Below are positions 3,001 to 23,013 of a DNA stretch of 64,000 nucleotides, in pieces. A program made the translations under genes and the position numbers. The stretch covers positions 62,001 through 126,000 of the IMG/VR virus record IMGVR_UViG_3300042386_001233. One strand, given 5' to 3'. How positions within the stretch are numbered: the stretch's first letter is position 1; each line of letters opens with the position of its first letter. A model generated the notes under the pieces. The model did no database searches and was not told where the DNA came from. It saw only the letters and a list, made by a program, of their open reading frames with translations.

Positions 3001-5684
3001 GTATTATTAATTATGGAGATTTAGTTAATGTTACTGTTACTGGTTGTCCAGCTGGTACTGCTAGTAACGATGGTCTGTATGTTACACTAGATACTGGATG
3101 GACTAAAATTACTGATCAGTCCATAGAGAATCTAACAAAGTCAATCTCCTTTTTAAAACATAATTCAGTATTGTCTTATAGTAATAGCTTATTTTATAAT
3201 GGATTAAATACAGACATAACAGCTTCTAAGGTTATAATTTGCCCTACTCGTATACCATATGATATATTTCTGGTTGGAGATACAGTAGAGTGCTATTCAA
3301 AAGACGATAGACTATTATCTTCTGGGGGCAGTATAACTACTGTTAATATCGTTAAAAAAGGACTAATAAATAAGAATAACAAACTATACTCTGTTTTTGT
3401 ATTAAATGCCGCCATCACTAACCAAGACACTATCTCGCCCACTTCTGCAACAAATACATTACTAGTATACTCTAACAATACAACTAAAGAAAATAGAATT
3501 AGTAAGGATTATAATGCGTGGGGACTTGATTCTAATGGATATATTAAGGAAACTCCTCCATATGCTGGGTTTTCTGCTCATAGTGTTGGTTCTTACGGTA
3601 ATATGTCTCCTTTTGTTAACAAGAATTTATTAGATAAAAATTTTAGATATAACTCACTACAGGCAGCACACAATATCTTAAATAATCATGAAAATGATAA
3701 AATTCAAAAAAATAAATTGATTGTATATAATTATAGTAATGGTTCTCTTTCTGGAATATCTGCTTTTTCTAATGATATGGCCTGTGGATTTTCGTATAAT
3801 GAAAATGATTTATACGATAGTTCTATTTTTCAAACTAAAACTTCTAATGTAGCTATTGCTCCTGAAAACACAAGACAAGTGGATGGCGATTTTAGTAATT
3901 TGTCAGATAGTTTATTTGAGCAAATTAAAAATACAACAGGATACAATGAAACCAATTATTCTTTTATGTATGTTAGAACCTCATCCTCATCAACAAATCG
4001 TGCAGCTGCTACAATTCCATTATCAGGATACGTTACAATAGAGAACAATTATGAAGAGTACGTGCCTATTAAATTTGTAGACTTAACTAATATTATATCA
4101 AGATTAGCTACTATAGATACATTAAAGATACAGACAACACTAGAAAATATTGTTGGAGACGAGAGTCAAACTTCTACTATTCTTGCGTCTTCAAATATTA
4201 AATATATAGAAAAGCATATGAACAAGTTGGTCAAAGACGATCCTAGTAGTTGTCATAGACCCGGAGCTGTTATAGCTGATTGTCCAAAATTAAGAACCCA
4301 AACGAAACTCAATAAACTATATGTAGAGCGGACAGATCTGATTAAATTATTAGAGCAGCAAGCTGTTCAATCTGCGTCGATAACATATTTTGACGATTCT
4401 GGGAATAGACAAACAAGTACTGGCACAATTATTGCAGAGAGTAGTAGTTCTATCTCTTTAGACACTAGTGGAGGCATAACAAAAATTGCTAAATCTAGTA
4501 TTATTAATACAGACACAGAATATGGCTTAGCTAGATCTTTTACAAGAAAAGACCTGTTAGCAGCAGACCATATGCATAAGGTATCGTCGGATATTTTACC
4601 CAAAATAGAACCAGTGATAACTACTAATACTGACAGTAGCATAAATATACAATATTCTGGGGTTAATCTTAATCATTATTGGATTAATATTGACCCAAAA
4701 CAATCTTGTGTTTTAGATTTTACTAGTAATCCTAAAGTATTAGACTCTACAGAATATTTTTGTATAGAAGCCAATGTATCTAGCATGAATGCATTTGGTA
4801 GTACAGTGGTTGCAAATAATAACGTATGTCCAGATTTTGCTTCCAAAGAAAATGTTCCACAATTTCCAAGCGACGCTATCGGAGATGAGGGGTTTTCTTC
4901 GGCAGTATATAGGACATATAAATATACTATTCCTTTCAATACTGTTGAAAGAAACAAAACAGCATTGTCGCGTGAATATCCGGCGATTACTGGTTGGACT
5001 AAATATACCAAAGAAAGATTTTTTAATATAAACGCTGATAATAGCTTAGGCATTGGTGGAGCTGGGGATGAGACAACTGTACAGTCTAAAGAAACATATT
5101 GGATACCACTAATTAATAATACTCCAACCCATAATGATGGTTCGGCAGATACTCAGTCTGTTCCGGGAATCCCACAATGCCAAACTGATTCTCCTAGTCC
5201 TCCTGGGTTTGGTTTAATTGGTTCTGCATTTTCTGGAGGACTTGTGATTGGTGGAGGAAGGGTCGGAACTAGCACCAGAGTACAAAATATTTTCAATCTA
5301 GACGACATAACCTCTATTGATGTTCAAATTAAGAGAATACCAAGAATGTTAAGAGGTTGCGATATACTAGGAACAGTATATAGATATGGTAATCGCAACA
5401 TATTTAGACAACAATCATCATCTAATCCTAGAGTACCTTTTGAAGTAGATGGAATTGGATTGAATGGACCAATAAATAACGGACTATACTGCTGGATTTG
5501 TCTGCAACAGAGACTATCAGATAATAGTCTAAGATACGCTCCCCTTCCTCCTTTTTTTCAACATCAAAACGAAATGATATTTAGGAGCTTTTTTGGTAGT
5601 ATAGATAGGATAGAGAATAGAACAGATCTTATGGTACCCTATTACCCATGGGAGCTTATTCCTTATGAGTATTCAAGAAGTTGA
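3..5684 (+). CDS. Very large virion/tail-associated protein (5'-truncated) with an expanded proprotein-convertase P-domain-like region
   Basis: >1890 aa, Ser/Thr/Asn-rich; frame is open at the window's left edge; IKDIEVKLNF..NLVIWLEVQP..FTDNA..LNG..FTLKIMVLD..LCNWELILH resembles a P-domain beta-sandwich with long insertions. Confidence 0.55.
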   Translation, partial: RVRCSKFNRVAISQIGAVFVPISTGFTVREFIGMIGSVPETEVVKLDELYKFSTKRAFTQTASANLSITYNLESNTIAKISSIYIEKIRSNISGCEQCYSLYEPKLRAVKTMVFTGASRVRAVRYSRINKAPEGFLFYKYKSQAGPGLISAATIETVSFGYPDITTAQSPPVKTYGGYNNNVINSFNIQNNINSTVYSSTIPGLSRPTSNTGDSISLAAAQPSTLPPVTGFPLDAVNDQSSAKHKLCYQRQLPYVGGGPITFNKGVLHPNSGWIPHTSSDYAIHANRSSVLKFNPGARSTFSFIGPKLSNISSTSANISDNVVEPNTLSSSVELRIAPNVQWNPACECEASEGADIELYNNNQKHKESIDTTTNRSSHGYRYLNGGQPKPIERTALTNEATYNDEFGTDQDDDTFTYSFAVTGPASVPSEVNGSDGKKHLRIPTVQDFGIKDIEVKLNFLNYINTKNLVIWLEVQPDGTELRSRKANNLGIYPSPIRASQKFLDQTIPSPIVSGTSYQPGSSSSLLYNNIPNTKIANYLDGLLNAENDVPGGPLRLLLLNQEHIENNGYNFSVKFTDNASKYNVLYDQNIVTGTPATTATFFPLNQLADIDKQQNIIRHNGTVKPSLAANSYSDRQSCEFSKVLRNNRLNITAASFSKFNTNTLFRNTPPETGPCSERSPKQKQGDLNGATKFTLKIMVLDETDDLSPNDTLINNQYLTGLSSSSKTQSSTDIFNSLCNWELILHVGDVPKFVPHTNPNLASYGNCDVLSLLDYDKNLKYPGYSFIADLTNYQHLLPLANIDAPNTAIADTSLCLTSKNDPVGRGFVVRPVEFPSYAIVQIVASLIPSTTGTLIGTATTPGLGYGQGFNAIISWFGESRFLSNLEDSGRQIFTQSYTKYPFGSSEKILLNVKKPDSLWYSLEATIMKYHNTPILQLKKHNYVKVQRGVSKYATEFGFGIVSEYQELIDLKNIPEISLSCDGTLPFPAASITYPTTNYGNRIINYGDLVNVTVTGCPAGTASNDGLYVTLDTGWTKITDQSIENLTKSISFLKHNSVLSYSNSLFYNGLNTDITASKVIICPTRIPYDIFLVGDTVECYSKDDRLLSSGGSITTVNIVKKGLINKNNKLYSVFVLNAAITNQDTISPTSATNTLLVYSNNTTKENRISKDYNAWGLDSNGYIKETPPYAGFSAHSVGSYGNMSPFVNKNLLDKNFRYNSLQAAHNILNNHENDKIQKNKLIVYNYSNGSLSGISAFSNDMACGFSYNENDLYDSSIFQTKTSNVAIAPENTRQVDGDFSNLSDSLFEQIKNTTGYNETNYSFMYVRTSSSSTNRAAATIPLSGYVTIENNYEEYVPIKFVDLTNIISRLATIDTLKIQTTLENIVGDESQTSTILASSNIKYIEKHMNKLVKDDPSSCHRPGAVIADCPKLRTQTKLNKLYVERTDLIKLLEQQAVQSASITYFDDSGNRQTSTGTIIAESSSSISLDTSGGITKIAKSSIINTDTEYGLARSFTRKDLLAADHMHKVSSDILPKIEPVITTNTDSSINIQYSGVNLNHYWINIDPKQSCVLDFTSNPKVLDSTEYFCIEANVSSMNAFGSTVVANNNVCPDFASKENVPQFPSDAIGDEGFSSAVYRTYKYTIPFNTVERNKTALSREYPAITGWTKYTKERFFNINADNSLGIGGAGDETTVQSKETYWIPLINNTPTHNDGSADTQSVPGIPQCQTDSPSPPGFGLIGSAFSGGLVIGGGRVGTSTRVQNIFNLDDITSIDVQIKRIPRMLRGCDILGTVYRYGNRNIFRQQSSSNPRVPFEVDGIGLNGPINNGLYCWICLQQRLSDNSLRYAPLPPFFQHQNEMIFRSFFGSIDRIENRTDLMVPYYPWELIPYEYSRS

Positions 5685-7966: not shown

Positions 7967-8399
7967 AAGTAAATTGCTCCACTGTGGCTATTGGGCGTTT
8001 CCAACACATAGAATATAGGTCGTTTAGAACTGGACTGGTTACAATTATATCAAGATTCTCTTGCTCATAAATAGATCTCCACTGTTCATACATTCCGGTA
8101 TTGGTTTGTGTCCAATGGGTATCAGATGTAAATAGTATACGCTTGCTAATATTTGGGAATTGATTACTCAGAATAACACTAGGCATATCAAATAGTATTA
8201 GTTTTCCATCAAAAAACTGTGCTTGTTGAAGATGAAAAATTGGAACATTAAAAGTGTTACTTTTTTCCGAATAACTATTGAACACTACATGTTGCTGGTA
8301 TGGGCGACGTTTAATAAATTGTTCTACAGTATTTAGAATACTGTCATAAGTCTTGTTATTTAAAAGCTTTATTAAGACAAATCCTATATCTTCATTCAT
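7941..8399 (-). CDS. Hypothetical protein, glycosyltransferase-fragment-like
   Basis: Coupled ORF at the end of the GT cluster; Rossmann-like LDIIVTS segment. Confidence 0.4.
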   Translation of the reverse strand: MNEDIGFVLIKLLNNKTYDSILNTVEQFIKRRPYQQHVVFNSYSEKSNTFNVPIFHLQQAQFFDGKLILFDMPSVILSNQFPNISKRILFTSDTHWTQTNTGMYEQWRSIYEQENLDIIVTSPVLNDLYSMCWKRPIATVEQFTYEELSKYI

Positions 8400-12108: not shown

Positions 12109-13776
12109 TTAGGTTACGTTTTTCAGGTGTGCGTATGTGATAAAATCTTCATCAAATTTAACATTATTATTCTTAACATTTTCTGCTTGATTATTATTAT
12201 CTATCATAGTATTAATATAGTCAAGAGTATTATTAAAATCAAAAGGAGCCATTGATGTAGCACTAGATTGTACAAATCCATAGTCTGCATTTTTAAGCAG
12301 TTCTAACATTTTGTATGATCCTATGAGTTCTGTTTCTTGGAAATTATTATTGCATATTCCAATAAGTCTATCAAAATGGGTCTGAGGATCAATATTTGAC
12401 TCTTTGATTACTGGTGTCTCATATTTTCCAGTATTCCATTTAGACCTATATCCCTTTGCATCTAATTCGTCAAAATACTTTTCCCATTTTTGAGCAATAT
12501 TATCCCAATTATAGTGCTGATGTGTCAGATCTTGAATTTCATGTCTTAATTTTTCTCTGGTTGGTTTTGGCTTATTGATAAAATCAATTATATAATTAGC
12601 TAAATCATTATTATCTGGATAAACCCGTAAAGCTTTTGTTTCTAGTTCTTTAAATAGAGTTTGTATCTTGATTGGGTAGGCTTTTAATTTTTTAACTATA
12701 TCACACATAGCACTATAATCCACGGTAGCTATCGGCACACCACAAGCCCCAGCCTCCACCTGCGGCATACCAAATCCCTCACAGATTGAGTACTGAACAT
12801 AAAGATCAAATATGTTGTATATGCTACTCAGAGTGTCAGAAGATACACCTTCTGTTACAGATGGAAAGGTCATGCTTTTGCTCATACATTTTACACAAAC
12901 CTTTTGTGGGCCAGTAAATACAGAGCACTGGGTTGTCTTACAGTTTTTACATATATAGGTGAATAGAACCCTATTACTAACTCTTGACTGTCTTAGTAGT
13001 TCAGGAATATCCCAACCCATATCAGGATAGCTAGTATGAAGATATAGATATAGATTCTCTCCCAAAGAACTATTAGAGGCTTCTAATCTATCTAGGACTT
13101 CTCTGAAAGTGGTAAATAATTCTGGTATTAGTTTGCGTTTTTGGTTACGCATAACTGATCCTATTATGATAGAATCAGGAGATAGTCCAAGCTGTTGTTT
13201 AATATCGCTTCTGTTTTTTATCTTAAAGGTATTAATATCCACGCCAGGGGAAGTAGTATCTATATAATTAATCTTGTTAGATGATTGCTCTTTAAGAACT
13301 TCCGCACCCCAATCAGAGTATGTAAAGACTGCATCTGCGTCTAAGAAGGTATCTATCCATTCTTCTTGCTGTGGTGAAGAATCTACTGTTGGCATTAATA
13401 TCCAATGGAAAAATTTTCTAAGAGGAGAGGATCCTTGGTAAGCACTCATCCAATAATCACGAACATCAATAACGATATCTGGTTTAAAGTCCAATAAAAC
13501 CTTTTCAAAACGCCAGCGTCCAAACTGATTGTCTACTCTGGACGAATATTCTTTATGTCTATGGTCTGAATCTTTAACAGCATTGGCGTAGTATTTCCAG
13601 TGAATAGATACATCCCTCGGATCATTAACAAAACCATAAGAAGCGAATTCTGCTATTTCATACTTATTGGTTTTGTGTAAACGAGTTAGTAGTTCTTTTG
13701 CATATATACCGAAACCAGAATGAATAAAACTGGCTTCAGAGCACATCAAGATTTTTAATTTATTGTTTTTTGTCAT
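12109..13776 (-). CDS. GT4 (GT-B) glycosyltransferase with Cys4 insertion
   Basis: SGFGIYA, RNQKRK and FDLYVQYSICEGFGMPQVEAGACGVP (intact EX7E); CKNC..CVKC insertion. Confidence 0.85.
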   Translation of the reverse strand: MTKNNKLKILMCSEASFIHSGFGIYAKELLTRLHKTNKYEIAEFASYGFVNDPRDVSIHWKYYANAVKDSDHRHKEYSSRVDNQFGRWRFEKVLLDFKPDIVIDVRDYWMSAYQGSSPLRKFFHWILMPTVDSSPQQEEWIDTFLDADAVFTYSDWGAEVLKEQSSNKINYIDTTSPGVDINTFKIKNRSDIKQQLGLSPDSIIIGSVMRNQKRKLIPELFTTFREVLDRLEASNSSLGENLYLYLHTSYPDMGWDIPELLRQSRVSNRVLFTYICKNCKTTQCSVFTGPQKVCVKCMSKSMTFPSVTEGVSSDTLSSIYNIFDLYVQYSICEGFGMPQVEAGACGVPIATVDYSAMCDIVKKLKAYPIKIQTLFKELETKALRVYPDNNDLANYIIDFINKPKPTREKLRHEIQDLTHQHYNWDNIAQKWEKYFDELDAKGYRSKWNTGKYETPVIKESNIDPQTHFDRLIGICNNNFQETELIGSYKMLELLKNADYGFVQSSATSMAPFDFNNTLDYINTMIDNNNQAENVKNNNVKFDEDFITYAHLKNVT

Positions 13777-13820
13777 AAAAAATAGACAGGGGCCTGCTCA
13801 TCACAGACCCCCGTTTATTG
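13777..13820 (-). terminator. Rho-independent terminator after ssb
   Basis: Minus strand ACGGGGGTCTG-loop-CAGGCCCCTGT followed by CTATTTTTT. Confidence 0.7.
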
Positions 13821-13841: not shown

Positions 13842-14213
13842 TTAAAACGCTACAGGTTCGGATGAGTCCTGCTTGCTGTTCTTTGTTAAGCGAGTGATCT
13901 TAGAAAAGTTATTTACTCTAACCTTAAGACTACTGTGCTTAACTCCGTCCTTTTCCCAGGTATCGTTCCTTAAAGATCCCTCGACCATAACCAAATCACC
14001 CTTCTTGAATGACTCAGCAATCATCTCGGCACCACTATCCCAAGCTTCACAATTAATGAAAGAAGTAATCTTGTCTTTGTCGCCACTAGCCTTCGTATAT
14101 TCACGAGATACAGCTACTGTAAAATTAACAACAGATGTTTGCTTGCCACCAGTATTAACAATCCTTAATTCTGGATCACGAGCAAGATTACCTCTAAGCA
14201 ATGTAATATTCAT
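13842..14213 (-). CDS. ssb: Single-stranded DNA-binding protein
   Basis: LRGNLARDPELR..FINCEAW..KGDLVMVEGSL and acidic C-tail ending VAF; start moved to ATG 14213, behind an AAGGAG RBS. Confidence 0.95.
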   Translation of the reverse strand: MNITLLRGNLARDPELRIVNTGGKQTSVVNFTVAVSREYTKASGDKDKITSFINCEAWDSGAEMIAESFKKGDLVMVEGSLRNDTWEKDGVKHSSLKVRVNNFSKITRLTKNSKQDSSEPVAF

Positions 14214-14256
14214 ATATATCAAACTCCTTGTAAAAAAGAAATCACGCAACTACTAC

Positions 14257-14284
14257 ATTATAGCAATGAGCCGTTGATTGTCAA
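14257..14284 (-). promoter_or_regulatory. Consensus sigma70 promoter for ssb
   Basis: TTGACA-N16-TATAAT with TGn extended -10. Confidence 0.8.
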
Positions 14285-15906
14285 GTTATAGGCTCAAAAC
14301 ACTTTTCTACGATCAGACCGTCCTTGCTTTTGCTTTTATTTCCTGAAAAGACTAAAATATTACCTATAAATAAATAAGATCTATACTGGGAAAACTGTTC
14401 AGGAAAAAAGACCACAGAATCCAAAGTTCCGTATTGATCCTCTATGGTAACAAAAGCCATCTCTAGACCCGGATTCTTACCGCTCTTAGTTTTAGTAACA
14501 TTAACATTCCCAATCTCTCCTACTAAAACTATGTTTTCTTTTAGCAATGATGTCTTGAATGTTTTACAATTACAATTGGCCATAGTAATATCATAAACAT
14601 CAAGTTTAGAGCATGTGATACCAACCCCTAGTAAATCATTTTCTTGATCTGATAACCATTCTATTTTATCAATTAAGGAGTAAGGCGGATGTCCTAATGA
14701 TCTTATATAGTTCGCTATTGTTTCTTTTCGTCCTCTGATTAGTTTAGTTTCAGTATATAAAGCACTGAGAATGTCTATTATAGTACTATCTATCATGGTC
14801 TTTGAGTAAATATTAAATACCGTTTGCTCTTTTTTGGTTAATCCAGAACATATTTCATATTCGAAGAGCATCTCTGATCTATTTTTCTTATAGTAGTCAA
14901 ATGCGCCGCTACTAATCAAAGCCTTGGCTGCAACAGAGTTTATATTCATCAGAATATTGCCGACCATTTGTGGCCACGTTATATCATTAACATTCGTGTT
15001 CTTTGTTAGTTCTAATATTTTCTTGTATACAGACTGTCCTACCCCCTTTATGTCTGTTAAGCCAAAGTATATCTTTTGATTTTTCAATATGAAAAGCTCA
15101 TTTAAATTTCTAAAGTCAGGAATATGGACTTCTATATCCATCTCCATAGCATTTCTAACCAACTCTTTTATTTCCTGTTGAGGATCTATTTTGTCCTTAG
15201 CGAACCTGAGATATGATGCAAAAAAGATCTTGGGGAAATGTGCTTTAGCATACGCTGATAAATAAGCATTCATTGCATAGCTTATGGAATGACTAGCATT
15301 AAATAAGTATCTTTGTGATTTTTCAATCCATTCGAATATTTGTTCTGCTTCTGGTTCTGATAGTTTCCCAGTCTGCTTAGATCCTTCTATAAACTTCTTA
15401 CGGACTTTTGCCATTTTATCTGCTTGCTTTTTACCAATGGCTTTTCTTAGATCGTCTGCTTCTTGTAAATTGAAACCCGCTAGCTCTTTAGCTATAGACA
15501 TAGCCTGTTCTTGGTAAATCATTTCAGAATAGGTATGTTTTAAGATTGGCTCTAGTGCTGGATGGAAATAGTCAATAGACTCTAAGCCATTCTTTTTATC
15601 TATATAATGATTGCTTACGCTTTTACCATCTCTATGTGCCTCAAGACAACCCGGCCTAAGAATACTGATCAAGCCAGATAGCTGCTCAATATTTTGAGGC
15701 TTTAATTTCCGGGCCATGGTTTGTCCTAATCTGGACTCTAGCTGAAAACATCCTTTAGTATTGCCTTCGGATATCAGTTCCCATGTTTTATAGCATTCTA
15801 AACTAATGTTAGATAGTTTGGGAGAAAATTTTATTTTAGGAAATTCTCCACCCTTATCTAATACTTCAAATTTACATCCACAATCAAATACAAAAGAGTC
15901 TGACAT
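14281..15906 (-). CDS. dnaE: DNA polymerase III alpha, C-terminal half (fingers, HhH, OB)
   Basis: GCFQLES, LRPG, IYQEQAM, ADDLRKAIGKK, YLFNASHS, GLTDIKGVG, MAFVTIEDQYG. Confidence 0.93.
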   Translation of the reverse strand: MSDSFVFDCGCKFEVLDKGGEFPKIKFSPKLSNISLECYKTWELISEGNTKGCFQLESRLGQTMARKLKPQNIEQLSGLISILRPGCLEAHRDGKSVSNHYIDKKNGLESIDYFHPALEPILKHTYSEMIYQEQAMSIAKELAGFNLQEADDLRKAIGKKQADKMAKVRKKFIEGSKQTGKLSEPEAEQIFEWIEKSQRYLFNASHSISYAMNAYLSAYAKAHFPKIFFASYLRFAKDKIDPQQEIKELVRNAMEMDIEVHIPDFRNLNELFILKNQKIYFGLTDIKGVGQSVYKKILELTKNTNVNDITWPQMVGNILMNINSVAAKALISSGAFDYYKKNRSEMLFEYEICSGLTKKEQTVFNIYSKTMIDSTIIDILSALYTETKLIRGRKETIANYIRSLGHPPYSLIDKIEWLSDQENDLLGVGITCSKLDVYDITMANCNCKTFKTSLLKENIVLVGEIGNVNVTKTKSGKNPGLEMAFVTIEDQYGTLDSVVFFPEQFSQYRSYLFIGNILVFSGNKSKSKDGLIVEKCFEPIT

Positions 15907-15908
15907 AT

Positions 15909-16607
15909 TTATCCAACGGTAAATGCTGATTTAAATTTTACTTTATTCGAAATATTACGATGTAGTCTAAGAAAACGAATTAAAATATCTGCCGTATCCT
16001 TAACGTCTTTAAGAGCATCGTGAGCGCCCTCTTTACTAATTCCTAGATAGTCTCTAAGGTTATCTAGTGTATAGTTTTTAAGTTCATTATTTCCTTCAAA
16101 CCAATAAAAAACCAAATTCATCAAATCTATAACATCTCTTGGATAAAAAAGATCTGAACGACCCTCTTTATTAAGATTGTCATATTTTTTACTAAGCCTC
16201 TCCATTATTCGTAAATCAAATCTGTTGATATTATACCCAGCAGCAATCGGAGCAGTAAAACATGATTTTTTACCGCTTGATCGTGAATGATACATATTCA
16301 GATATGATACAAATAATTGCCATCCATTTTCTTGCTTTTGATAGGACTTCCAGTCAGCTAAAATAGCATCTTTAGTACTAGACCTAACTTTCGCATGAAA
16401 GTCTAGAACATCAGAATCTCCATAAGCATAATCAATATTATTTTCTAAAGCTTCTGGCTTTATCGTAATATTAAATTCAGAATCTGGTATAACTTCTAGT
16501 CGATATGGATCGATCATTATAGCAGCAATCTGAACAGGACTACATGTGTCGGGATTAATCCCGTCGGTTTCAAGATCAAATACGCAAATTTTTTGTAAAT
16601 TAGCCAT
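15909..16607 (-). CDS. DEDDh 3'-5' exonuclease (DnaQ/epsilon-like)
   Basis: VFDLETDG, AGYNINRFD, AHDALKDV. Confidence 0.9.
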   Translation of the reverse strand: MANLQKICVFDLETDGINPDTCSPVQIAAIMIDPYRLEVIPDSEFNITIKPEALENNIDYAYGDSDVLDFHAKVRSSTKDAILADWKSYQKQENGWQLFVSYLNMYHSRSSGKKSCFTAPIAAGYNINRFDLRIMERLSKKYDNLNKEGRSDLFYPRDVIDLMNLVFYWFEGNNELKNYTLDNLRDYLGISKEGAHDALKDVKDTADILIRFLRLHRNISNKVKFKSAFTVG

Positions 16608-16779
16608 TTACCACTACTACTGTTGAACCTGGGAAAAATGCCTTCTGGTTATTATCAGCTGCTACTTGACAGTTGATAGATCTGCAACAACTAACTCTGA
16701 CTTCTTCTGTCTTAACGTATTCAACATTGTTAACAGTGAATTTATCACCGAGCACTAATTCTTCAAATTTCTTTTCCAT
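16600..16779 (-). CDS. Small 59-aa protein between the dnaE halves (not in the ORF track)
   Basis: Hand-translated MEKKFEELVLGDKFTVNNVEYVKTEEVRVSCCRSINCQVAADNNQKAFFPGSTVVVVNG; GGAG RBS; overlaps the exonuclease start. Confidence 0.7.
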   Translation of the reverse strand: MEKKFEELVLGDKFTVNNVEYVKTEEVRVSCCRSINCQVAADNNQKAFFPGSTVVVVNG

Positions 16780-16781
16780 GA

Positions 16782-18650
16782 TTATTCTCCATATTTTAAT
16801 ATGTCTGATATTGTCATAATTTTATCCAACATAGCAACGCCCAGAATATCAAATTTAATTAAACCAAGACTTTCTAAATCCTGCATTTCCATACCGGCTA
16901 TGGCCTGTTTATTCTTTGTGTCATATACCATTGGACATACAGAACTAAGTTTTTTGCTACTAATAACTACACCAGCAGCATGTTTAGATTGATTTGACTT
17001 GGTTCCTTCCAGCCTGATTGCTTGCTCAAATCTTTTGGCCAGTGGTCCCTCCAGAACGTTGTCATTAGATATATAGCACCATTCCTTGAGTTTGTCAACA
17101 TTATTTTCTAAAGCCCAACGTATGATAGAAGCTTCTCCAGTATCTTCTTTCATTTCTTGCAATTCGTCTGCAATTTTTGCTTCGTCAGGAATACTTTTAG
17201 TAATTCTGTTCATTTCATCAAAGGATATATTACCATAAACTCTTAAAACTTCCTTTAAAGCTCCTCTACCTTTCATAGTATTAAAAGTTATCATTTGAGA
17301 TACTTTTTCTATTCCATATTTATCTTTAATATAGTCTATGACATATTGTCTTTTGGTAATTGGTACGTCCACATCAATATCTGGCATGGATATATGATCT
17401 GCAGTATTTCTTCCTTCGTTATAAAATCTCTCAAACAACAAATCATACTTAATAGGATTAATATCTGTAATACCGACAAGATATGATACCAAACATCCAG
17501 CAGCACTACCTCTACCCGGTCCTGGTAGCCATCCATTGGACTTAACATAATTGACAATATCTTGAATAATTAAAAAATAACTAGATAATCCAGCACCTTG
17601 TAGAACTTTTAATTCAAACTTGATACGATTAACATAGGTTTCGTGTTCAGACTCTGGAACTTTATCAGCAATCTTTTCTCTCCAGCCATCTCGACAAAGT
17701 TGTCTAAGATATTCGTCTGGATCAGCATTATTGGGACATTCAAACGTTGGAAGGGATGGCTTGCTCAATATATTGTATTCTTCACATAGCGAGTCTACAT
17801 ACAAAGTGTTTTCGATCTCTTCTTCTGTATGAATATCACTCATCTCTTCTGGAGATAGTATGTGATAATTATCTGACTGAAAAAAACAACTCAATGGAAC
17901 ATCTTGATTAGCTAATAGCTTTTTATTCACATCTACTAAAGTAGTCTTCAGATTGTTACATAGTAGAATTCTTTGGTCTATGGCGTCTTCTTTTGTGCAA
18001 TAATGAGCATCTGGTGTGCATATTACTTTTGTTTTTGTTTTACTGCCCAAAGAACGAACAAAATCTGTTATGTCTCTTTGTGCAGGATTGAGTGCTTGGT
18101 CCATAAGCTGTGCTTCTAAAAAGAAGTTCTCTTGACCAAATATTTCTTTCATTTTAGCTACAAAATCTATACCTATCTTATCCATTGTTCCAGACTGGTT
18201 TTCTAATAGATCTGGCAAGAGAGATCCCAAATGACCACAGAACCCTATAATATTCCCATCCAAAAAATTAGCTAGTCTGTCCATACTAATTCTTGGCTTA
18301 TGATAAAAATTTTCTTCTTTATTGGTTTCGGAAGCTATTGAGATTAAATTACGCCACCCCTTTAAATTCTTCGCCAATACTAAAAAATGACTAAGCTTGC
18401 TATTTTCTTTAGTTTTGATGTTAGAATCTTCATGGGAAATATAAAGTTCACAACCTAGTATTGGCTTTATATTTTGAGCTTTAAGAGCTTGGAAAAATTG
18501 AACACATCCAGAAATAGAACCATGATCAGTTAATGCACACGATTTAATCCCAGTGTTAGCACATCTTTGAGCAATCTGATGAGGCTTGCTGATACCGTCC
18601 AATAGGCTGTAGTGAGAGTGTGTATGCAATGCGGCATAAGTTTTAGTCAT
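16782..18650 (-). CDS. dnaE: DNA polymerase III alpha, N-terminal half (PHP, palm, thumb)
   Basis: HTHSHYSLLDG, TDHG, DAHY, GPGRGSAAG, MPDIDVD, GLIKFDILG. Confidence 0.95.
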   Translation of the reverse strand: MTKTYAALHTHSHYSLLDGISKPHQIAQRCANTGIKSCALTDHGSISGCVQFFQALKAQNIKPILGCELYISHEDSNIKTKENSKLSHFLVLAKNLKGWRNLISIASETNKEENFYHKPRISMDRLANFLDGNIIGFCGHLGSLLPDLLENQSGTMDKIGIDFVAKMKEIFGQENFFLEAQLMDQALNPAQRDITDFVRSLGSKTKTKVICTPDAHYCTKEDAIDQRILLCNNLKTTLVDVNKKLLANQDVPLSCFFQSDNYHILSPEEMSDIHTEEEIENTLYVDSLCEEYNILSKPSLPTFECPNNADPDEYLRQLCRDGWREKIADKVPESEHETYVNRIKFELKVLQGAGLSSYFLIIQDIVNYVKSNGWLPGPGRGSAAGCLVSYLVGITDINPIKYDLLFERFYNEGRNTADHISMPDIDVDVPITKRQYVIDYIKDKYGIEKVSQMITFNTMKGRGALKEVLRVYGNISFDEMNRITKSIPDEAKIADELQEMKEDTGEASIIRWALENNVDKLKEWCYISNDNVLEGPLAKRFEQAIRLEGTKSNQSKHAAGVVISSKKLSSVCPMVYDTKNKQAIAGMEMQDLESLGLIKFDILGVAMLDKIMTISDILKYGE

Positions 18651-19687
18651 ACTGTTCCTGGGGCCTTGTATAATCCAATAGAGTGTTTCGGGTGCTTGTA
18701 CAAGTTCATTGTAGTGTCGATTCCGTAAAGATCAAGATCATGTTTTACCTGTTCACACTTTGTCATGGTTTGGCCAACAGAGCATGTTTGACCGTCTCTA
18801 TATTCTGTTATAGGAGTGACATTAGTATTGTCAAAAGTTGTTTTGCCAAAATGACATAATTTGTTACACATCCAGCTTTTATGTAATCTGGGTTTTTTAG
18901 TATTTTTAATAAGTTCGTACTTAGCCCTCAGCATGTTCTCTGTTTCTGCTAAGTCAGAATCATTAAAACATATAGTAAATGGACCTCCATCATTAATAAA
19001 ATAAATAGAGAACATTATATGGTTAATCTTAGGATATAAATGCTTAATAGCATAATGATATATTCTTAATTGAGGATCTCTTTCCAATTTTTCTTGAGTC
19101 TTTTCTTCTCCTGTAGCCCAGTCAAGTCTCCTACCAGTTTTCCAGTCTATAATTTCTATGGTGGTATCATTAACCAGAGTTATTAGGTCAATAGTTCCCT
19201 TAAGAGCTAAATTACCAGTAATCTTCTTATCTTCTACATCATACGAATATTTAGCCCATGGTTTAGATATCTCAAAGTCAAAGTGTTGTTCTGGACATAG
19301 AACATTTCTATTTCTAGGATCAAACATCCCATTGTTAAACTCGATTGCTTTATATACCCAAGCCCGACAATCTTTTAAGTCTTTGGGAGACCATTTATGG
19401 TGCTGTGTTTGTTGAGTATAATAATCGTAGACTTTATCAATAATTTCATCCAGATTATAGCTATGTACATTTATTAAACCAAAGACATCGTCTTCTACAG
19501 TGTCTAGATTGTCTTGTTGTGCCTTTTTAATAACTGCTAAAATTTCTAGAACTTTATGAGTTATTGTTCCTTTATCTGCCTTTTGACCAGACGGACCCCG
19601 CCACCCTAGTACATATTCAGCAAAATATTGCTGTTCACAGAGACTATGAGTATTGTAAGAAGAACTTCTAAAGTATGTTATTATCAT
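18647..19687 (-). CDS. PD-(D/E)XK exonuclease (AddB/Cas4-like)
   Basis: GTITHKVLE, LKGTIDLI, IIDWKTG, QLRIY; N-terminal Cys and C-terminal CNKLC. Confidence 0.85.
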   Translation of the reverse strand: MIITYFRSSSYNTHSLCEQQYFAEYVLGWRGPSGQKADKGTITHKVLEILAVIKKAQQDNLDTVEDDVFGLINVHSYNLDEIIDKVYDYYTQQTQHHKWSPKDLKDCRAWVYKAIEFNNGMFDPRNRNVLCPEQHFDFEISKPWAKYSYDVEDKKITGNLALKGTIDLITLVNDTTIEIIDWKTGRRLDWATGEEKTQEKLERDPQLRIYHYAIKHLYPKINHIMFSIYFINDGGPFTICFNDSDLAETENMLRAKYELIKNTKKPRLHKSWMCNKLCHFGKTTFDNTNVTPITEYRDGQTCSVGQTMTKCEQVKHDLDLYGIDTTMNLYKHPKHSIGLYKAPGTV

Positions 19688-20415
19688 GTAGTGAGTCCTA
19701 AGAGGTTTTCTAGTAATGTTTTAATTTGAGACACCTGATCATATATTGACGAATTAACATTATCTATAACGTAATCAAATTTAGACCAGTCAAATTTATC
19801 TTTATCTAATATGGATTCGCTAAGATGATCAGAATTATGTGGATTTCTAGTTAGTCTTAATACTTTGCCACCAATATTTTGAATTGACTCAACCTCGTTA
19901 GGAAAACGACAGTCTGTAATTATAGCAATATCTGGTTTTTCTCTGACTATTTTAGAGATGGTTGCTTTTACCCAAACGTCAGGATCTAATTTACGAAATA
20001 TGTCCGTTCCTATAATTTGCATAGCATCTCTGCCAGACAGCTGCTTGTTTTCCCATTGCAAATGTGTGGTTTGATTTTTTTCATCATCACTACCATAACA
20101 TTGATTATATTCCAATCCTAGAATATTCATGCAAATGTCTTGTTTTAAAACATCTGCAAAGTTATATATTTTGATTTTACTATATAGTTTTTGCAATAAG
20201 CTTTGGGCATTAATATCTGTCTTTGGTATTATGTGTGGTTGAAATAATCCTTCGTACTCTTTATTTCCGCCAAAATCAGAAAGTAGTATCTGTCCTTCGT
20301 CGTCTAGTAATACCTTTTCTGCCAAGCCTAGTTTAGACAGATGCAGAGATAATATAAAGTTACCAGCTGTTGTTTTGCCGGATTGTTTTCGTCCAGATAT
20401 ACCTAGCACTATCAT
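19684..20415 (-). CDS. Deoxynucleoside monophosphate kinase
   Basis: GRKQSGKTT, FADVLK, R..MQ.IGT..R, ITDCRFPNE, H.SE. Confidence 0.85.
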   Translation of the reverse strand: MIVLGISGRKQSGKTTAGNFILSLHLSKLGLAEKVLLDDEGQILLSDFGGNKEYEGLFQPHIIPKTDINAQSLLQKLYSKIKIYNFADVLKQDICMNILGLEYNQCYGSDDEKNQTTHLQWENKQLSGRDAMQIIGTDIFRKLDPDVWVKATISKIVREKPDIAIITDCRFPNEVESIQNIGGKVLRLTRNPHNSDHLSESILDKDKFDWSKFDYVIDNVNSSIYDQVSQIKTLLENLLGLTT

Positions 20416-21581
20416 ATAGAGTATCCTTGTAGTTGTGGTAAAATATATTCATGAATATCTTTTGTAGACATTTCTGCAATATCGTTTGCTGTTAACTTAA
20501 TGTGTTTAATGTTATATGTTCTACAACATTTTTCTTCTATATTCTTAGCAGCAGCCTCGCCAGCCTTATCATTATCCATAATTGTTACTATGTTCATGGC
20601 TCCAGAAATATCTAATAACATCTTTTGCTTGTGACTTAATGATGCTCCAAAGATTGCCACAGAATTATGTATTCCTGCTTCTTCTAGTCTCCATACATTT
20701 CCAGGACTTTCTACCAGAATCACAGTATGAGAAGACGAGATATGCTCTTTAGCGAACCAATAATTATACAAATACTCTTGTGTTTTAAAGTTTTTATTAT
20801 GTCTCCATTTACAGTACTTCCATACCTCATTGTCAGATGGGCAATCTGATTCGGTTTTATGGAATCCTCCACATTTGATACATTTATTATAGAAGGTTCG
20901 TCCAGTACAACCTGTCATATTTTGACCACTATCATCATAAACAGGAACCACCGCCCTGTCACACATTTCCTTGTTAGGATCTAAGCAGTCTCCAACGTCA
21001 TATTTGCGCAATACGTCCTCACTGAAGCCCCTATTTAAAAAGTATTGAGATGGAATAGACAGAGCTTTAACCACAGATGATCTGGGAACAGTACCAAGAT
21101 TTATTGGCCTATCATTTGATTGAATATTTTTTATGGCATTTATAAAAGTAGATTTTTCTTTGGCTCTTTTTGAGACCTTGATATTGGCCAAATCAGACTT
21201 ACTAAAATCAATAGCAAACTCCAGAGCTTCACCAAAAGATACTACTGGATCTCCTGATTTAGACCATCCCTTTTCATGAGACAAACAACCTCTAATAAAC
21301 CCAATAATAGACGACTTAAAAATTTCTTCACATTGATGGGTTCTGCATTTCCAGTTACCTCTATAAGAGTCTCCTTGATGATACAGATTAAACGCGGAGT
21401 CGTTATCTCCTCCGTGGATTGGACAACTCATGATAACCATTTTATCAAGCATTCTATAAGATGTTATTCCGAGATGACTGAGTAAATTCTCTATATCATC
21501 ACAGACCACATCAGATAGATGCTTTAATTGATGCTGATCATACGAATGGTATTTCTTCTGCTTCTTCTTCATTATATTCAT
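20412..21581 (-). CDS. dnaG: DNA primase (Zn finger + Toprim)
   Basis: CPIHGGDN..WKCRTHQC; YFLNRG; LVESPGNVW; MDNDKAG. Confidence 0.85.
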   Translation of the reverse strand: MNIMKKKQKKYHSYDQHQLKHLSDVVCDDIENLLSHLGITSYRMLDKMVIMSCPIHGGDNDSAFNLYHQGDSYRGNWKCRTHQCEEIFKSSIIGFIRGCLSHEKGWSKSGDPVVSFGEALEFAIDFSKSDLANIKVSKRAKEKSTFINAIKNIQSNDRPINLGTVPRSSVVKALSIPSQYFLNRGFSEDVLRKYDVGDCLDPNKEMCDRAVVPVYDDSGQNMTGCTGRTFYNKCIKCGGFHKTESDCPSDNEVWKYCKWRHNKNFKTQEYLYNYWFAKEHISSSHTVILVESPGNVWRLEEAGIHNSVAIFGASLSHKQKMLLDISGAMNIVTIMDNDKAGEAAAKNIEEKCCRTYNIKHIKLTANDIAEMSTKDIHEYILPQLQGYSI

Positions 21582-23013
21582 TGTTACTAACTATAAATCC
21601 ATCTTTTTTGGTCTGAACGTTGTTAACTAATTCTAAACGAGTTTTACCTTCTACTATTTTGGCACACCAACCCTTCATGTGACAATTAATATAATCATTA
21701 TCGTCTAATCCTCCTCCGTGACGACTAATTAATGGCACTAACTTACGATTCCCATTATCTGGACCATCTTCAGCAATCTCCTCATCTGACTTTCTTTTAA
21801 AGATAGTGAAATTGCTACAGAGCCAAATGATTCTGTCTGATCCGCTAGCGGTATCTGTACTTTCCTTGGAAATACCGTCTCTGTTTAATTGTATAAAGGC
21901 TACTATTGGTACCTTATATTTAACGGCAAAGTTATGTAATGATGTCATCATGAAGCCAAGAACCTGATATTCTTTCATGTCTTGAGAGATACCGGCAGAG
22001 TCCATGAGCTTTAGATAGTCATAAAAAATTACGCACTCTTTAGCTGTGCCGTCATCATTAAGTCCAACCTCTTTAACTATCCACCTCCTCATTAATGCTA
22101 ATTGTTCTTCGAATGATTTGCCAGCAATACTATGATGATACAGTCTACTGGCTTTTAATTCAGCTACAGCTGCTTGCATTTTAGACATAGATCCTGGAGT
22201 ATCTGCAAACTTACCAGTTTCTATTTTGGATATTTCTAGTTCTGATGACATAGCAAGAATACGATGAACGTGGTCTTCCCTAGTCATTTCAGTATCCATA
22301 TTCAATACTGGTATTTTTAACTTACTAGCAATATAATAACCCATATTGTCTGATAGTAATGTCTTGCCCACCTTTGGTCTGGCCGCTATTACATTAACTG
22401 TTCCACGACGCAAACCCCCTCCAATAGACTGGTCATAAACTGGAAATCCTGTAGATATACCAATTTGATCTACTTTATGTTCTTGCAAAAACTTAATATA
22501 ATCATCAATGTCTTTGCCTATAGAAGATGGAGAAGAATCACCGTCAGTTGACAAAGAAGAAGAGAAATTAAAGATAGACTCTTCTGCTATACCTATAATA
22601 GAAGATATATTCTCTGACCCAGTAACATCTAATAGTTGTTCCTGAGCATTCTCTAGTTCTTTATGTAGTAATCTGGCTATTTCTAGCTTCTTGATTTTGG
22701 CAGCAAACTTCCTAACGTTTTCTAGATTAACTGGAAAATCGAATATAGCTTTTAAGTGCTGCGCTTCCTCTTTTTTGGATAAAACGTCTGATAGTCCCAA
22801 CTCTTGGGCAGACGAGTAGATAGATGCTAGATCTAGTTTAGTCTGAGGATTTTTATCACAGATATTCTTAATGCATTTATAAATTATTTGATTGCTGTCA
22901 ATAGTAAATGCGCCTTCTTGGATTATATCACAAATATCCAAGTAGGCATCTTCACCATACTTCAATATACCGCTCAGTACCGCTCTTTCTGCGGAAGGAT
23001 CACATAAAATCAT
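21538..23013 (-). CDS. dnaB: Replicative DNA helicase
   Basis: AERAVL, GISTGF, AARPKVGKT, DTEM, FYDYLKL, QLNR. Confidence 0.95.
   Translation of the reverse strand: MILCDPSAERAVLSGILKYGEDAYLDICDIIQEGAFTIDSNQIIYKCIKNICDKNPQTKLDLASIYSSAQELGLSDVLSKKEEAQHLKAIFDFPVNLENVRKFAAKIKKLEIARLLHKELENAQEQLLDVTGSENISSIIGIAEESIFNFSSSLSTDGDSSPSSIGKDIDDYIKFLQEHKVDQIGISTGFPVYDQSIGGGLRRGTVNVIAARPKVGKTLLSDNMGYYIASKLKIPVLNMDTEMTREDHVHRILAMSSELEISKIETGKFADTPGSMSKMQAAVAELKASRLYHHSIAGKSFEEQLALMRRWIVKEVGLNDDGTAKECVIFYDYLKLMDSAGISQDMKEYQVLGFMMTSLHNFAVKYKVPIVAFIQLNRDGISKESTDTASGSDRIIWLCSNFTIFKRKSDEEIAEDGPDNGNRKLVPLISRHGGGLDDNDYINCHMKGWCAKIVEGKTRLELVNNVQTKKDGFIVSNNEYNEEEAEEIPFV

What the first reader, a model, noticed from the sequence alone, without database searches (positions are those of the whole stretch)
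14281..18650. Intein-less split DnaE with an exonuclease and a 59-aa Cys protein between the halves
Seen: the N-half ends just after GLIKFDILG, so it holds all three palm aspartates. The C-half starts with a novel MSDSFVFDCGCKF extension before GCFQLES. Neither end shows intein motifs, and the site used by cyanobacterial split DnaE inteins (Y-C/L-FN-x-SH) is uninterrupted here. The gap holds a DEDDh exonuclease and an untracked 59-aa ORF with CC..C. Inference: a non-covalent multi-chain replicase, in which the CxC and CC..C motifs might form an inter-subunit metal clasp.
Basis: partly seen in the sequence, partly recalled or inferred. Interest (0 to 1): 0.62.

Follow-up and report, generated by a model that had tools for sequence, protein, structure and literature searches.

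The report
Two-piece phage DNA polymerase III
A 244-kb lake-water phage encodes its only detectable DNA polymerase as two separate proteins with a proofreading exonuclease gene between them, an intein-free split shared by hundreds of uncultured phages, whereas the proposed cysteine "metal clasp" to the 59-aa protein is not supported.

Summary
On the minus strand lie DnaE-N (PHP + palm, 622 aa), a 59-aa ORF (s59), a DEDDh exonuclease (232 aa) and DnaE-C (fingers + HhH + OB, 541 aa). They are tightly packed, with no intein, no Rfam intron and no terminator between them.

The split is real. Four lake metagenome runs from 2018-2024 each hold the stretch in one contig with no differences. All 80 close IMG/VR loci keep the gene order, and at least 586 viral contigs encode a C-half relative. 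Of the 150 best 50%-identity cluster representatives, 141 end at this break. All four genes are under purifying selection (dN/dS 0.05-0.15). No other polymerase was found in the complete genome.

The catalytic aspartates sit on the N chain and the RKAIGKK stretch that aligns with E. coli RRAMGKK sits on the C chain, so a non-covalent two-chain enzyme is the best reading. Association of the chains is inferred, not shown.

The rare unsplit relatives nest inside split clades, which points to secondary re-fusion. A cultured Rossellomorea phage has the same break independently.

The "clasp" idea fails on phyletic pattern. Only CC is invariant in s59, and the C-half CxC...C hairpin also occurs without s59. 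The role of s59, an SH3-like barrel, remains open. I found no published description of this split.

The parts
16782..18650 (-). DnaE-N: PHP domain plus palm/thumb of a C-family (Pol III alpha) polymerase, 622 aa. It carries all three catalytic aspartates: D424 and D426 (17373-17381) and D601 (16848-16850). It ends about 20 residues after the KFD motif.
   Evidence: Pfam PHP and DNA_pol3_alpha. D424/D426/D601 are invariant. dN/dS 0.05.
16600..16779 (-). s59: a 59-aa all-beta protein. C31-C32 falls between predicted strands 19-30 and 33-39. The gene starts 2 nt after the DnaE-N stop and overlaps the exonuclease start by 8 nt (ATGGCTAA).
   Evidence: A real gene: dN/dS 0.15. 57 distinct homologues, with F14, K23, C31, C32 and N36 invariant. 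AF2 model pLDDT 94. SH3-like barrel matches. No Pfam, PHROG or PDB sequence match.
15909..16607 (-). DEDDh (DnaQ/epsilon-like) 3'-5' exonuclease, 232 aa.
   Evidence: Pfam RNase_T at 47.5 bits against a cut-off of 24. PHROG 192 'DNA polymerase exonuclease subunit'. D11, E13, D131, H196 and D201 are invariant. dN/dS 0.06.
14281..15906 (-). DnaE-C: fingers, HhH and a C-terminal OB-like part, 541 aa. It carries RKAIGKK (residues 154-160), which aligns with E. coli RRAMGKK.
   Evidence: Pfam DNA_pol3_finger and HHH_6; the OB hit is below cut-off. Residues 32-347 align to E. coli alpha 587-899 and Taq alpha 648-954. dN/dS 0.06.
15814..15906 (-). Split-specific N-terminal extension of DnaE-C (residues 1-31). 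It is predicted to form short beta-strands with C9-G10-C11 between them. C38 just downstream is also invariant.
   Evidence: C9, G10, C11, F13, F27 and C38 are invariant in 33 sequences. The extension is absent from unsplit relatives. AF2 gives strands 4-6 and 12-17 with pLDDT about 75-79.
15289..15309 (-). The YLFNASH site. It is uninterrupted here. Relatives P0029 and P0051 carry a split-intein N fragment at this position.
13842..14249 (-). SSB, the next gene in the replication module. The true start is probably the internal MNITLL...
   Evidence: Pfam SSB E 1e-25. Its position after DnaE-C is conserved in the loci that extend far enough to show it.
18647..19687 (-). PD-(D/E)XK (Cas4-like) nuclease immediately upstream of DnaE-N. 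Part of the conserved module DnaB - primase - dNMP kinase - nuclease - DnaE-N.
   Evidence: Pfam PDDEXK_1. Synteny.

Best explanation
The window holds the replication module of a complete 243.8-kb freshwater phage genome. In it the C-family polymerase (DnaE / Pol III alpha) is encoded as two separately translated polypeptides that must assemble non-covalently.

Where the break lies. It falls in the stretch between the helix after the third catalytic Asp and the start of the region that aligns with the E. coli fingers (roughly E. coli alpha 575-586, by alignment).

How the active site is divided. The N chain supplies the PHP domain and the palm carboxylates (D424, D426, D601). The C chain supplies the fingers, including RKAIGKK, which aligns with E. 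coli RRAMGKK. From general knowledge of Pol III alpha this is the triphosphate-binding stretch. The C chain also supplies the HhH and a C-terminal OB-like part. Neither chain alone should polymerise.

Expression. The four genes DnaE-N, s59, exonuclease and DnaE-C are packed with 2-nt gaps or an 8-nt overlap and have no terminator between them. They are therefore very probably co-transcribed and translationally coupled. The DEDDh exonuclease is most likely the epsilon-like proofreading subunit.

Evolution. The split is old. It is ancestral to a large family of uncultured phage DnaEs. The gap has become a landing pad that holds different extra genes in different lineages: s59, an unrelated small protein ('sX'), UDG, or TnpB. 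Rare unsplit relatives are secondary re-fusions.

Open parts. s59 is a lineage-specific SH3-like accessory protein. Its most likely role is as a partner of the exonuclease or polymerase (theta-like in role, not in fold), but its partner is not established. The C-half's Cys3 extension is a split-associated feature of unknown ligand chemistry.

Shown versus inferred. Shown: gene structure, conservation, selection, absence of inteins and of Rfam introns, absence of another polymerase family, and phyletic patterns. Inferred: physical association of the chains, proofreading by the exonuclease, co-transcription, and the role of s59.
For: Domain split: Pfam places PHP + palm in one ORF and fingers + HhH in the other. 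The PDB alignment places the C-half start at E. coli alpha 587.

Assembly is sound: four runs from 2018-2024 each hold the whole 4.5 kb in one contig with 0 differences and no joined form.

Conservation:
- 80 of 80 close loci keep the order PDDEXK - N - s59 - exo - C, followed by SSB wherever the locus reaches that far.
- At least 586 IMG/VR stretches encode a C-half relative. 83 of 84 analysed loci are split, with the exonuclease directly upstream of the C-half or kept in an N-s59-exo block.
- 141 of the 150 best 50%-cluster representatives (37-67% identity) end at the same point.

Selection: dN/dS is 0.05 (N), 0.15 (s59), 0.06 (exo) and 0.06 (C). Catalytic and finger residues are invariant.

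Only polymerase found: one PF07733 hit, and no PolA or PolB, in the complete genome with direct terminal repeats.

No joining mechanism:
- No Hint or intein domain in the window proteins, while inteins are detected in relatives.
- No Rfam intron.
- In relatives the halves lie up to 6.8 kb apart, with TnpB, UDG and other genes between them.

Coupled junctions and no internal terminator.

Tree: the unsplit forms make two small clades (support 0.99 and 0.87) nested inside split-only clades.

Independent case: the same break occurs in cultured Rossellomorea phage phiT1, gp20 | gp19 | gp18.
Against: - No direct evidence that the two chains bind. No N+C complex or fold was computed, and the single complex job went to exonuclease + s59 and gave no verdict.
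- No RNA data: none of the 24 runs holding the stretch is recorded as RNA. Co-transcription and the absence of RNA-level joining therefore rest on sequence alone.
- No clamp or clamp loader was found by Pfam, so how processivity is achieved is unknown.
- The AF2 model of the C-half alone is poor for residues 52-111.
- The tree uses FastTree on the N-half region only, rooted on distant outgroups, and several deep nodes are weakly supported.
Confidence: 0.82

Rival explanations
1. One reading: the CC(..C) of s59 and the CxC of the DnaE-C N-terminus jointly bind a metal and hold the subunits together.
For: C31-C32 of s59 is invariant in 57 distinct sequences and lies between two predicted strands. 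C9, C11 and C38 of DnaE-C are invariant and lie in a split-specific extension. Two ligands from one chain plus two or three from the other would be a plausible ligand count.
Against: - The third Cys of s59 alternates with Ala.
- The CxC...C motif persists in lineages that lack s59: L085, L089 and L097 carry the unrelated sX protein, and L122 has no small ORF.
- An s59-like protein exists without CC (L132).
- L145 has s59 but no CxC as its ORF start was called.
- Some split lineages have neither feature (L084, L126 group).
- s59 stays with the exonuclease gene when insertions separate the genes (L074; L115).
- The s59 + C-half pair itself was never folded.
Confidence: 0.1
2. The two halves are covalently joined after all, by a non-canonical intein, RNA trans- or cis-splicing, or translational bypass, so the working enzyme is a single chain.
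For: Relatives in the same family do use inteins, including split inteins at the FNxSH site. Phage DnaE genes elsewhere are annotated in several pieces with gaps, for example Bacillus phage vB_BceM_WH1 gp235-237.
Against: - No Hint or intein signal at either end. The N chain ends ...KYGE and the C chain starts MSDSF, without the usual intein-junction residues (my reading of the sequence).
- The intervening DNA consists of two protein-coding genes under purifying selection. Their 2-nt spacers and 8-nt overlap leave no room for intron structure.
- No Rfam intron.
- In relatives the gap varies from 0.68 to 6.8 kb with unrelated gene content.
Confidence: 0.03
3. The halves are remnants or have diverged to separate jobs (for example a PHP nuclease and a DNA-binding factor), and the phage replicates with the host polymerase.
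For: No clamp or clamp loader was detected in the phage. Association of the halves is untested.
Against: - Very low dN/dS for both halves (0.05-0.06).
- Polymerase catalytic Asp residues and the finger residues R154, K155, G158, K159 and K160 are invariant across relatives down to 59-69% identity.
- The genes sit in a full replication module of DnaB, primase, SSB and exonuclease.
- No other polymerase is present.
- Some descendants re-fused into a normal single-chain DnaE, which implies the halves still formed one enzyme.
Confidence: 0.04

Closest known systems
Bacterial DnaE (Pol III alpha; E. coli, T. aquaticus, M. tuberculosis structures 5FKU, 2HPI, 5LEW) with the epsilon (DnaQ) proofreader
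   Same: The same domain series: PHP, palm with three Asp, fingers with an RRxxGKK-type motif, HhH and a C-terminal OB-like part. The C-half aligns to E. coli 587-899 at E 6e-45. A separate DEDDh exonuclease is encoded beside it.
   Different: One polypeptide in bacteria, two here. The phage adds about 20-30 residues at the break. The nine PHP ligand positions appear conserved here by my reading of the sequence, which I did not test. No clamp, clamp loader or theta was found in the phage.
Cyanobacterial split-intein DnaE (Ssp/Npu DnaE)
   Same: dnaE is encoded as two genes.
   Different: There the pieces carry split-intein halves, are ligated by protein trans-splicing and break at the FN-x-SH region. 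Here there is no intein and the break is about 200 residues earlier. Relatives P0029 and P0051 do appear to have a split-intein N fragment at FNK|C and FNA|C.
Split 'minimal' Pol III alpha of group 2.2 jumbo phages (Iyer et al. 2021, PMC7824862)
   Same: An intein-less split of a Pol III alpha catalytic module in large phages. It was inferred computationally.
   Different: That one is described as a minimal version split into NTP-binding and Mg/DNA-binding subdomains. Its pieces are encoded by distant genes and it accompanies a family B replicase. Here a full-length DnaE with PHP, HhH and OB is split at the palm/fingers junction. The genes lie in one operon, and no family A or B polymerase is present.
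Rossellomorea phage phiT1 gp20 / gp19 / gp18 (GenBank PV767480)
   Same: The same break point...KFDLLGLKTLKVIQNSVDQINQGVAV* then MFDILDIPLDD.... A small ORF lies between the halves, and both halves are annotated 'DNA polymerase III subunit alpha'.
   Different: A 52.8-kb phage of a Bacillaceae host, only about 30-34% identical, lying among the outgroups in the tree. There is no exonuclease between the halves, the 49-aa ORF has no Cys and is unrelated to s59, and there is no CxC extension.
Other naturally split phage polymerases (for example the chimallivirus split polymerase, bioRxiv 2026, PMC13648687)
   Same: A replicative polymerase assembled from separately encoded chains, with accessory subunits encoded nearby.
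   Different: Different polymerase families, so different folds and different break points. I saw only the abstract.
PolC of Firmicutes
   Same: A DEDDh exonuclease is embedded 'inside' a C-family polymerase gene.
   Different: In PolC the exonuclease is an in-frame domain inserted in the PHP domain of a single chain (general knowledge). Here it is a separate cistron between palm and fingers.

Membership tests
C-family DNA polymerase, DnaE type (Pol III alpha) | N-terminal PHP domain | tested here: met
   PF02811 E 6e-35, residues 8-181 of DnaE-N.
C-family DNA polymerase, DnaE type (Pol III alpha) | Pol-beta-like palm with three catalytic aspartates | tested here: met
   PF07733 E 5e-75. PDIDVD (D424, D426) and KFD (D601) are invariant in 34 sequences.
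C-family DNA polymerase, DnaE type (Pol III alpha) | Fingers domain with the RRxxGKK-type motif, followed by HhH | tested here: met
   PF17657 E 9e-44 and PF14579 E 8e-10 in DnaE-C. RKAIGKK aligns to E. coli RRAMGKK. R154, K155, G158, K159 and K160 are invariant.
C-family DNA polymerase, DnaE type (Pol III alpha) | C-terminal OB fold | tested here: inconclusive
   PF01336 scores 23.4 bits, below the cut-off of 27. The AF2 model shows a five-strand beta region at 459-537.
C-family DNA polymerase, DnaE type (Pol III alpha) | All domains on one polypeptide | tested here: not met
   There are two ORFs with two other genes between them. It is therefore a split variant of the family, not the canonical architecture.
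Split-intein DnaE | Hint/intein fragments at the C-end of the N piece and the N-end of the C piece | tested here: not met
   No intein or Hint family at E <= 0.01. The same scan detects inteins in relatives.
Split-intein DnaE | Break at the FN-x-SH site | tested here: not met
   RYLFNASHS is continuous inside DnaE-C.
DnaQ-like DEDDh 3'-5' exonuclease | Exo I (DxE), Exo II (D) and Exo III (Hx4D) motifs | tested here: met
   D11, E13, D131, H196 and D201 are invariant in 49 and in 24 sequences. PF00929 scores 47.5 bits against a cut-off of 24.
Split minimal Pol III alpha of group 2.2 jumbo phages (Iyer et al. 2021) | A minimal catalytic module without PHP, pieces encoded far apart, coexisting with a family B polymerase | tested here: not met
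   PHP is present, the genes lie in one operon, and there is no PF00136 hit in the genome.
Theta (HolE) / HOT subunit | A small helical protein homologous to HolE that binds epsilon | tested here: not met
   The s59 model is all-beta with an SH3-like barrel and has no Pfam hit. Binding to the exonuclease got no verdict. Any likeness to theta would be in role only.
Zinc ribbon / knuckle | Four Cys/His ligands on two knuckles | tested here: inconclusive
   There are only three invariant Cys in the DnaE-C head and two in s59. No consistent fourth ligand was found in DnaE-N.

The most novel reading that the evidence does not exclude
A large, mostly uncultured clade of aquatic phages replicates with an obligately heteromeric C-family polymerase whose active site is built across two chains. 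The split-specific Cys3 extension on the C chain may be a metal-dependent latch onto the N chain. Small lineage-specific proteins (s59, sX) may be interchangeable adaptor subunits that tie the epsilon-like exonuclease to the split core. On this reading the gene gap acts as an evolvable 'slot' for replisome accessories, and the fission can be reversed, since it was re-fused twice.
Probability: 0.2. Interest if true: 0.65.

Novelty: new variant of a known kind. Interest (0 to 1): 0.5.

Why it matters
Pol III alpha has been studied as a single chain. A natural version cut between palm and fingers, conserved in many lineages, shows that the C-family active site can be assembled from two polypeptides. 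It also marks that position as a permissive fission point, used at least twice independently: in this family and in phiT1.

It offers a ready-made system for studying palm-fingers communication, for engineering split C-family polymerases, and for asking how an epsilon-like proofreader and small accessory proteins are recruited without tau, clamp or theta.

For annotation, it explains why hundreds of viral contigs carry two 'DNA polymerase III alpha' genes that are neither pseudogenes nor assembly errors. PF07733 was already noted as the marker of a large group of marine jumbo phages (PMC9123017), but the split was not mentioned in the passages I retrieved.

Tried and rejected
- Complex prediction of exonuclease (A5) + s59 (A6) + Zn, with s59 as partner. 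Scores were 0.01 and 0.10 against a mark of 0.32, so no verdict. This is not evidence either way.
- No N+C or s59+C-half complex could be run because the cap is one job. The only juxtaposition was a display alignment of junction segments in a local script.
- Sequence searches for s59 found nothing informative. There were no hits in Pfam, PHROGs or a PDB profile search. The word search found only close 59-aa relatives named 'hypothetical protein'. The ESM Atlas returned its own viral clusters.
- Fold searches for s59 give only a generic SH3-like / Tudor / KOW / EF-P domain I likeness: Foldseek PDB E about 0.09, VIA Z <= 5.1, and BFVD uncharacterised small phage proteins at TM about 0.8.
- Search for a fourth metal ligand in DnaE-N that co-varies with the CxC motif. 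C255 and H274 looked promising (0 of 10 and 3 of 10 in CxC-less sequences, against 82 of 95 and 91 of 95). But 13 of the 95 CxC-bearing sequences lack C255, and the CxC-less set amounts to only a few lineages. I judged this not convincing.
- Nucleotide search against GenBank phages found no match.
- The top tblastn 'phage' hits from human faecal samples proved to be unsplit DnaEs of about 1166 aa. One is followed by an ORF that looks like a bacterial phosphofructokinase to me, which I did not test.
- Single-protein scans with the L084 and L085 C-halves found 0 and 2 loci. The alignment-based scan was needed instead.
- Seven literature searches found no description of an intein-less full-length DnaE split in phages. 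The library is limited to open-access papers and bioRxiv.
- Rfam gave only a sub-threshold snoRNA chance hit in the region.

Full report
**What is there**

On the minus strand of the window lies a replication module:

| Gene | Coordinates | Size |
|---|---|---|
| DnaB | 21538-23013 | 491 aa |
| Toprim primase | 20412-21581 | 389 aa |
| dNMP kinase | 19684-20415 | 243 aa |
| PD-(D/E)XK nuclease | 18647-19687 | 346 aa |
| DnaE-N | 16782-18650 | 622 aa |
| s59 | 16600-16779 | 59 aa |
| DEDDh exonuclease | 15909-16607 | 232 aa |
| DnaE-C | 14281-15906 | 541 aa |
| SSB | 13842-14249 | 135 aa |

- DnaE-N carries PHP (E 6e-35) and the Pol III alpha palm family PF07733 (E 5e-75).
- DnaE-C carries the finger domain PF17657 (E 9e-44), HHH_6 and a sub-threshold OB hit.
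- DnaE-N ends 21 residues after the KFD motif. DnaE-C residues 32-347 align with E. coli alpha 587-899 and Taq alpha 648-954.
- The break therefore lies between the helix after the third catalytic Asp and the start of the region aligning with the E. coli fingers.

**The junctions**

The junction DNA reads as follows:
- ...GGA GAA TAA tc ATG: the last codons of DnaE-N look like a Shine-Dalgarno sequence for s59.
- ATGGCTAA: an 8-nt overlap between s59 and the exonuclease.
- GGA TAA at ATG: exonuclease to DnaE-C.

No terminator-like site lies between the four genes on the coding strand. The first one follows SSB at 13814-13786.

**Not an artefact**

- The window belongs to a 243,821-bp viral record with direct terminal repeats, estimated complete.
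- Twenty-four lake or freshwater metagenome runs hold the 4.5-kb stretch completely.
- In four of them (2018, 2020, 2023, 2024) it lies in one contig with no differences and no joined form. The single 'joint' row is a 20-base side match of an unrelated contig with 1228 other letters between.
- All of these runs may include the window's own source sample, but they are separate runs and assemblies.

**Conservation**

- A scan of IMG/VR with DnaE-N found 226 relatives. All 80 kept loci (67-100% identity) have the order nuclease - N - s59 - exo - C, as far as each locus extends, and SSB follows wherever the locus reaches that far. Spacers are mostly 2 nt or short overlaps.
- Pooled pairwise dN/dS is 0.05 (N), 0.15 (s59), 0.06 (exo) and 0.06 (C).
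- An exhaustive phmmer search of 1.84 billion 50%-identity cluster representatives returned 27,676 hits. Of the best 150 (37-67% identity), 141 end within 25 residues of the same point.
- A profile-guided scan with C-halves found at least 586 viral stretches. Of 84 analysed loci, 83 are split.

**A composite active site, and the only polymerase found**

- D424, D426 and D601 (PDIDVD and KFD) are invariant in the N chain.
- RKAIGKK, which aligns with E. coli RRAMGKK, is in the C chain, and five of its seven residues are invariant. From general knowledge of Pol III alpha these are, respectively, the metal-binding carboxylates and the triphosphate-binding finger residues.
- The genome has one PF07733 hit and no family A or B polymerase. 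It also has no detectable beta clamp or clamp loader.
- Two chains that must assemble is therefore the economical reading. Association itself was not tested.

**No joining mechanism**

- Pfam finds no intein or Hint domain in the window proteins.
- The same library detects Intein_splicing, LAGLIDADG and Hint in relatives. These relatives carry contiguous inteins at positions equivalent to residue 67 and residues 381/382.
- In P0029 and P0051 the protein ends ...FNK|CLDPTT and ...FNA|CLSPST with a partial intein domain below the Pfam cut-off. This looks like a split-intein N fragment at the FN-x-SH site. That site is uninterrupted in the window.
- Rfam finds no intron.
- In distant relatives the halves are 0.68 to 6.8 kb apart. 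The genes between them include TnpB, UDG and others. This excludes any fixed splicing element.

**Evolution**

- Four near relatives are unsplit: P0035 (1133 aa), P0062 (1151 aa), P0108 (1102 aa) and P0028 (1396 aa, with an intein).
- At the junction they lack the 25-30 residues that the split forms carry.
- P0035 sits in the same synteny (dNMP kinase, nuclease, DnaE, SSB, glycosyltransferase), with an exonuclease-like stretch about 4 kb downstream.
- I built a FastTree LG+gamma tree of the N-half region. Inteins were stripped by profile alignment. The tree has 143 tips and is rooted on Geobacillus phage GBK1, Streptomyces phage Faust and two unsplit DnaEs from faecal contigs.
- In that tree the unsplit forms, together with the two split-intein forms, make two small clades (support 0.99 and 0.87). 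Both are nested deep inside split-only clades.
- The parsimonious reading is that the split is ancestral to this family and was reversed twice. Caveats: one gene region, approximate supports, distant root.
- Independently, cultured Rossellomorea phage phiT1 (PV767480) has gp20 (573 aa), gp19 (49 aa) and gp18 (469 aa) broken at the same position. It has no exonuclease and no Cys motif, and it groups with the outgroups. This position is thus a recurrent permissive fission point.

**The cysteine motifs**

- In s59 only F14, K23, C31, C32 and N36 are invariant. The third Cys of 'CC..C' alternates with Ala.
- In DnaE-C, C9, G10, C11, F13, F27 and C38 are invariant. They lie in an N-terminal extension that AF2 predicts as short strands (pLDDT about 75-79) and that unsplit relatives lack.

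The phyletic pattern speaks against a clasp between s59 and the C-half:
- The s59 profile hits about two-thirds of the 84 broader loci.
- Other lineages have a different small family directly after DnaE-N, here called sX. It is 71-92 aa with the pattern GC.IEY..LSLC...YQVH[SC]D. It occurs either with the CxC motif (L085, L089, L097) or without it (L112, L114, the L126 group).
- L122 has CxC but no small ORF.
- L132 has an s59-like protein without CC.
- L084 has neither feature.
- When insertions separate the genes, s59 stays with the exonuclease (L074, L115), and sX stays with DnaE-N (L085).

I looked for a fourth ligand in DnaE-N and found nothing consistent.

**What s59 is**

- It is a confidently predicted all-beta protein (pLDDT 94).
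- It has a generic SH3-like barrel likeness: EF-P domain I, eIF5A, Tudor, KOW, FeoA and the IdeR SH3 domain, with Foldseek E about 0.09 and VIA Z <= 5.1.
- It has closer fold matches (TM about 0.8) to many uncharacterised small phage proteins.
- By my count of its charged residues it is roughly neutral, so I do not favour a DNA-binding role.
- I tested exonuclease + s59 + Zn with the one complex job. The score was under the mark and gives no verdict. Its role stays open. An accessory that binds the exonuclease or polymerase is my best guess, at about 0.3-0.4.

**Comparison with what is known**

- The enzyme is a member of the DnaE family by every domain test, except that it is not one polypeptide.
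- It is not a split-intein DnaE.
- It differs from the split 'minimal' Pol III alpha that Iyer et al. inferred in group 2.2 jumbo phages. That one is described as having no PHP, being encoded by distant genes and sitting beside a family B replicase (PMC7824862).
- Weinheimer and Aylward noted PF07733 as the marker of a large, mostly metagenomic group of marine jumbo phages. The passages I retrieved do not mention a split (PMC9123017).
- Source databases already label both halves 'DNA polymerase-3 subunit alpha'.
- Seven literature searches found no description of this architecture.

**Verdict**

The split is real, ancient, widespread and functional, and intein-free. It is a new variant of a known kind, the naturally split phage polymerases. 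The multi-chain replicase reading is well supported by comparative evidence. The specific s59/C-half metal clasp is not. The Cys3 extension and the small proteins in the gap remain unexplained.

Noticed in passing
window 14257-14284 (-): A perfect sigma-70 consensus (TTGACA, 16 nt, TATAAT, with TG) overlaps the last codons of DnaE-C, just upstream of SSB. A strong terminator-like hairpin follows SSB at 13786-13814.
   Followed up: no
L085:7885-8160, L126:6080-6304, L114:6110-6349, L097:6116-6331, L089:5494-5742: A second, unrelated small protein family ('sX', 71-92 aa; GC.IEY..LSLC.L...YQVH[SC]D..FS..Y..A..KF.ELK) takes the place of s59 directly after DnaE-N in other lineages. It has no Pfam or PHROG match.
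   Followed up: partly
L084:8329-9693: A TnpB-like gene (Cas12f1-like_TNB, 454 aa) together with UDG sits between the two DnaE halves in a relative at 44% identity.
   Followed up: no
P0160 (762 aa): A DnaE-N homologue fused at the split point to a circularly permuted YpsA SLOG domain (PF12694, E 2e-35).
   Followed up: no
L049, L051, L057 (s59/exonuclease junction, about 8044-8052): In these loci the exonuclease frame has no ATG, GTG or TTG at the usual position after s59. The frame stays open back into s59, which suggests a non-canonical start or a frameshift.
   Followed up: no
L126, L139, L140, L143, L158 (DnaE-N): This CxC-less lineage has lost several PHP metal-ligand positions (H42 to I, H215 to Y, and gaps at H87 and H139). 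This suggests an inactivated PHP domain.
   Followed up: no
P0030, P0031, P0036, P0039, P0043, P0048, P0050, P0056, P0073 and others: Many DnaE-N homologues carry contiguous inteins at positions equivalent to window residues 67 and 381/382, some with LAGLIDADG domains. P0073 has two.
   Followed up: partly
L157:5492-6157 and L132:5909-6286: Longer s59-like proteins. One is 222 aa with KSCCSPGYNC and an acidic tail. The other is 126 aa without CC but with a C-terminal Cys-rich acidic tail (CDEDCDEGCGSCD), and it matches PHROG 2183 at E 1e-4.
   Followed up: no
L173 (Bacillus phage vB_BceM_WH1, LC597490 194353-198551): DnaE is annotated as three CDS (gp235, gp236, gp237) separated by gaps of about 0.7 and 0.4 kb. 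This is a different kind of fragmentation, possibly by introns.
   Followed up: no
window 3-5684 (+): An ORF of about 1,890 aa runs off the 5' end of the window on the opposite strand to the replication module.
   Followed up: no
window 12109-13776 (-) and L085, L086: A glycosyltransferase of about 550 aa follows SSB in the window and in relatives at 37-48% identity. The synteny therefore extends beyond the replication genes.
   Followed up: no
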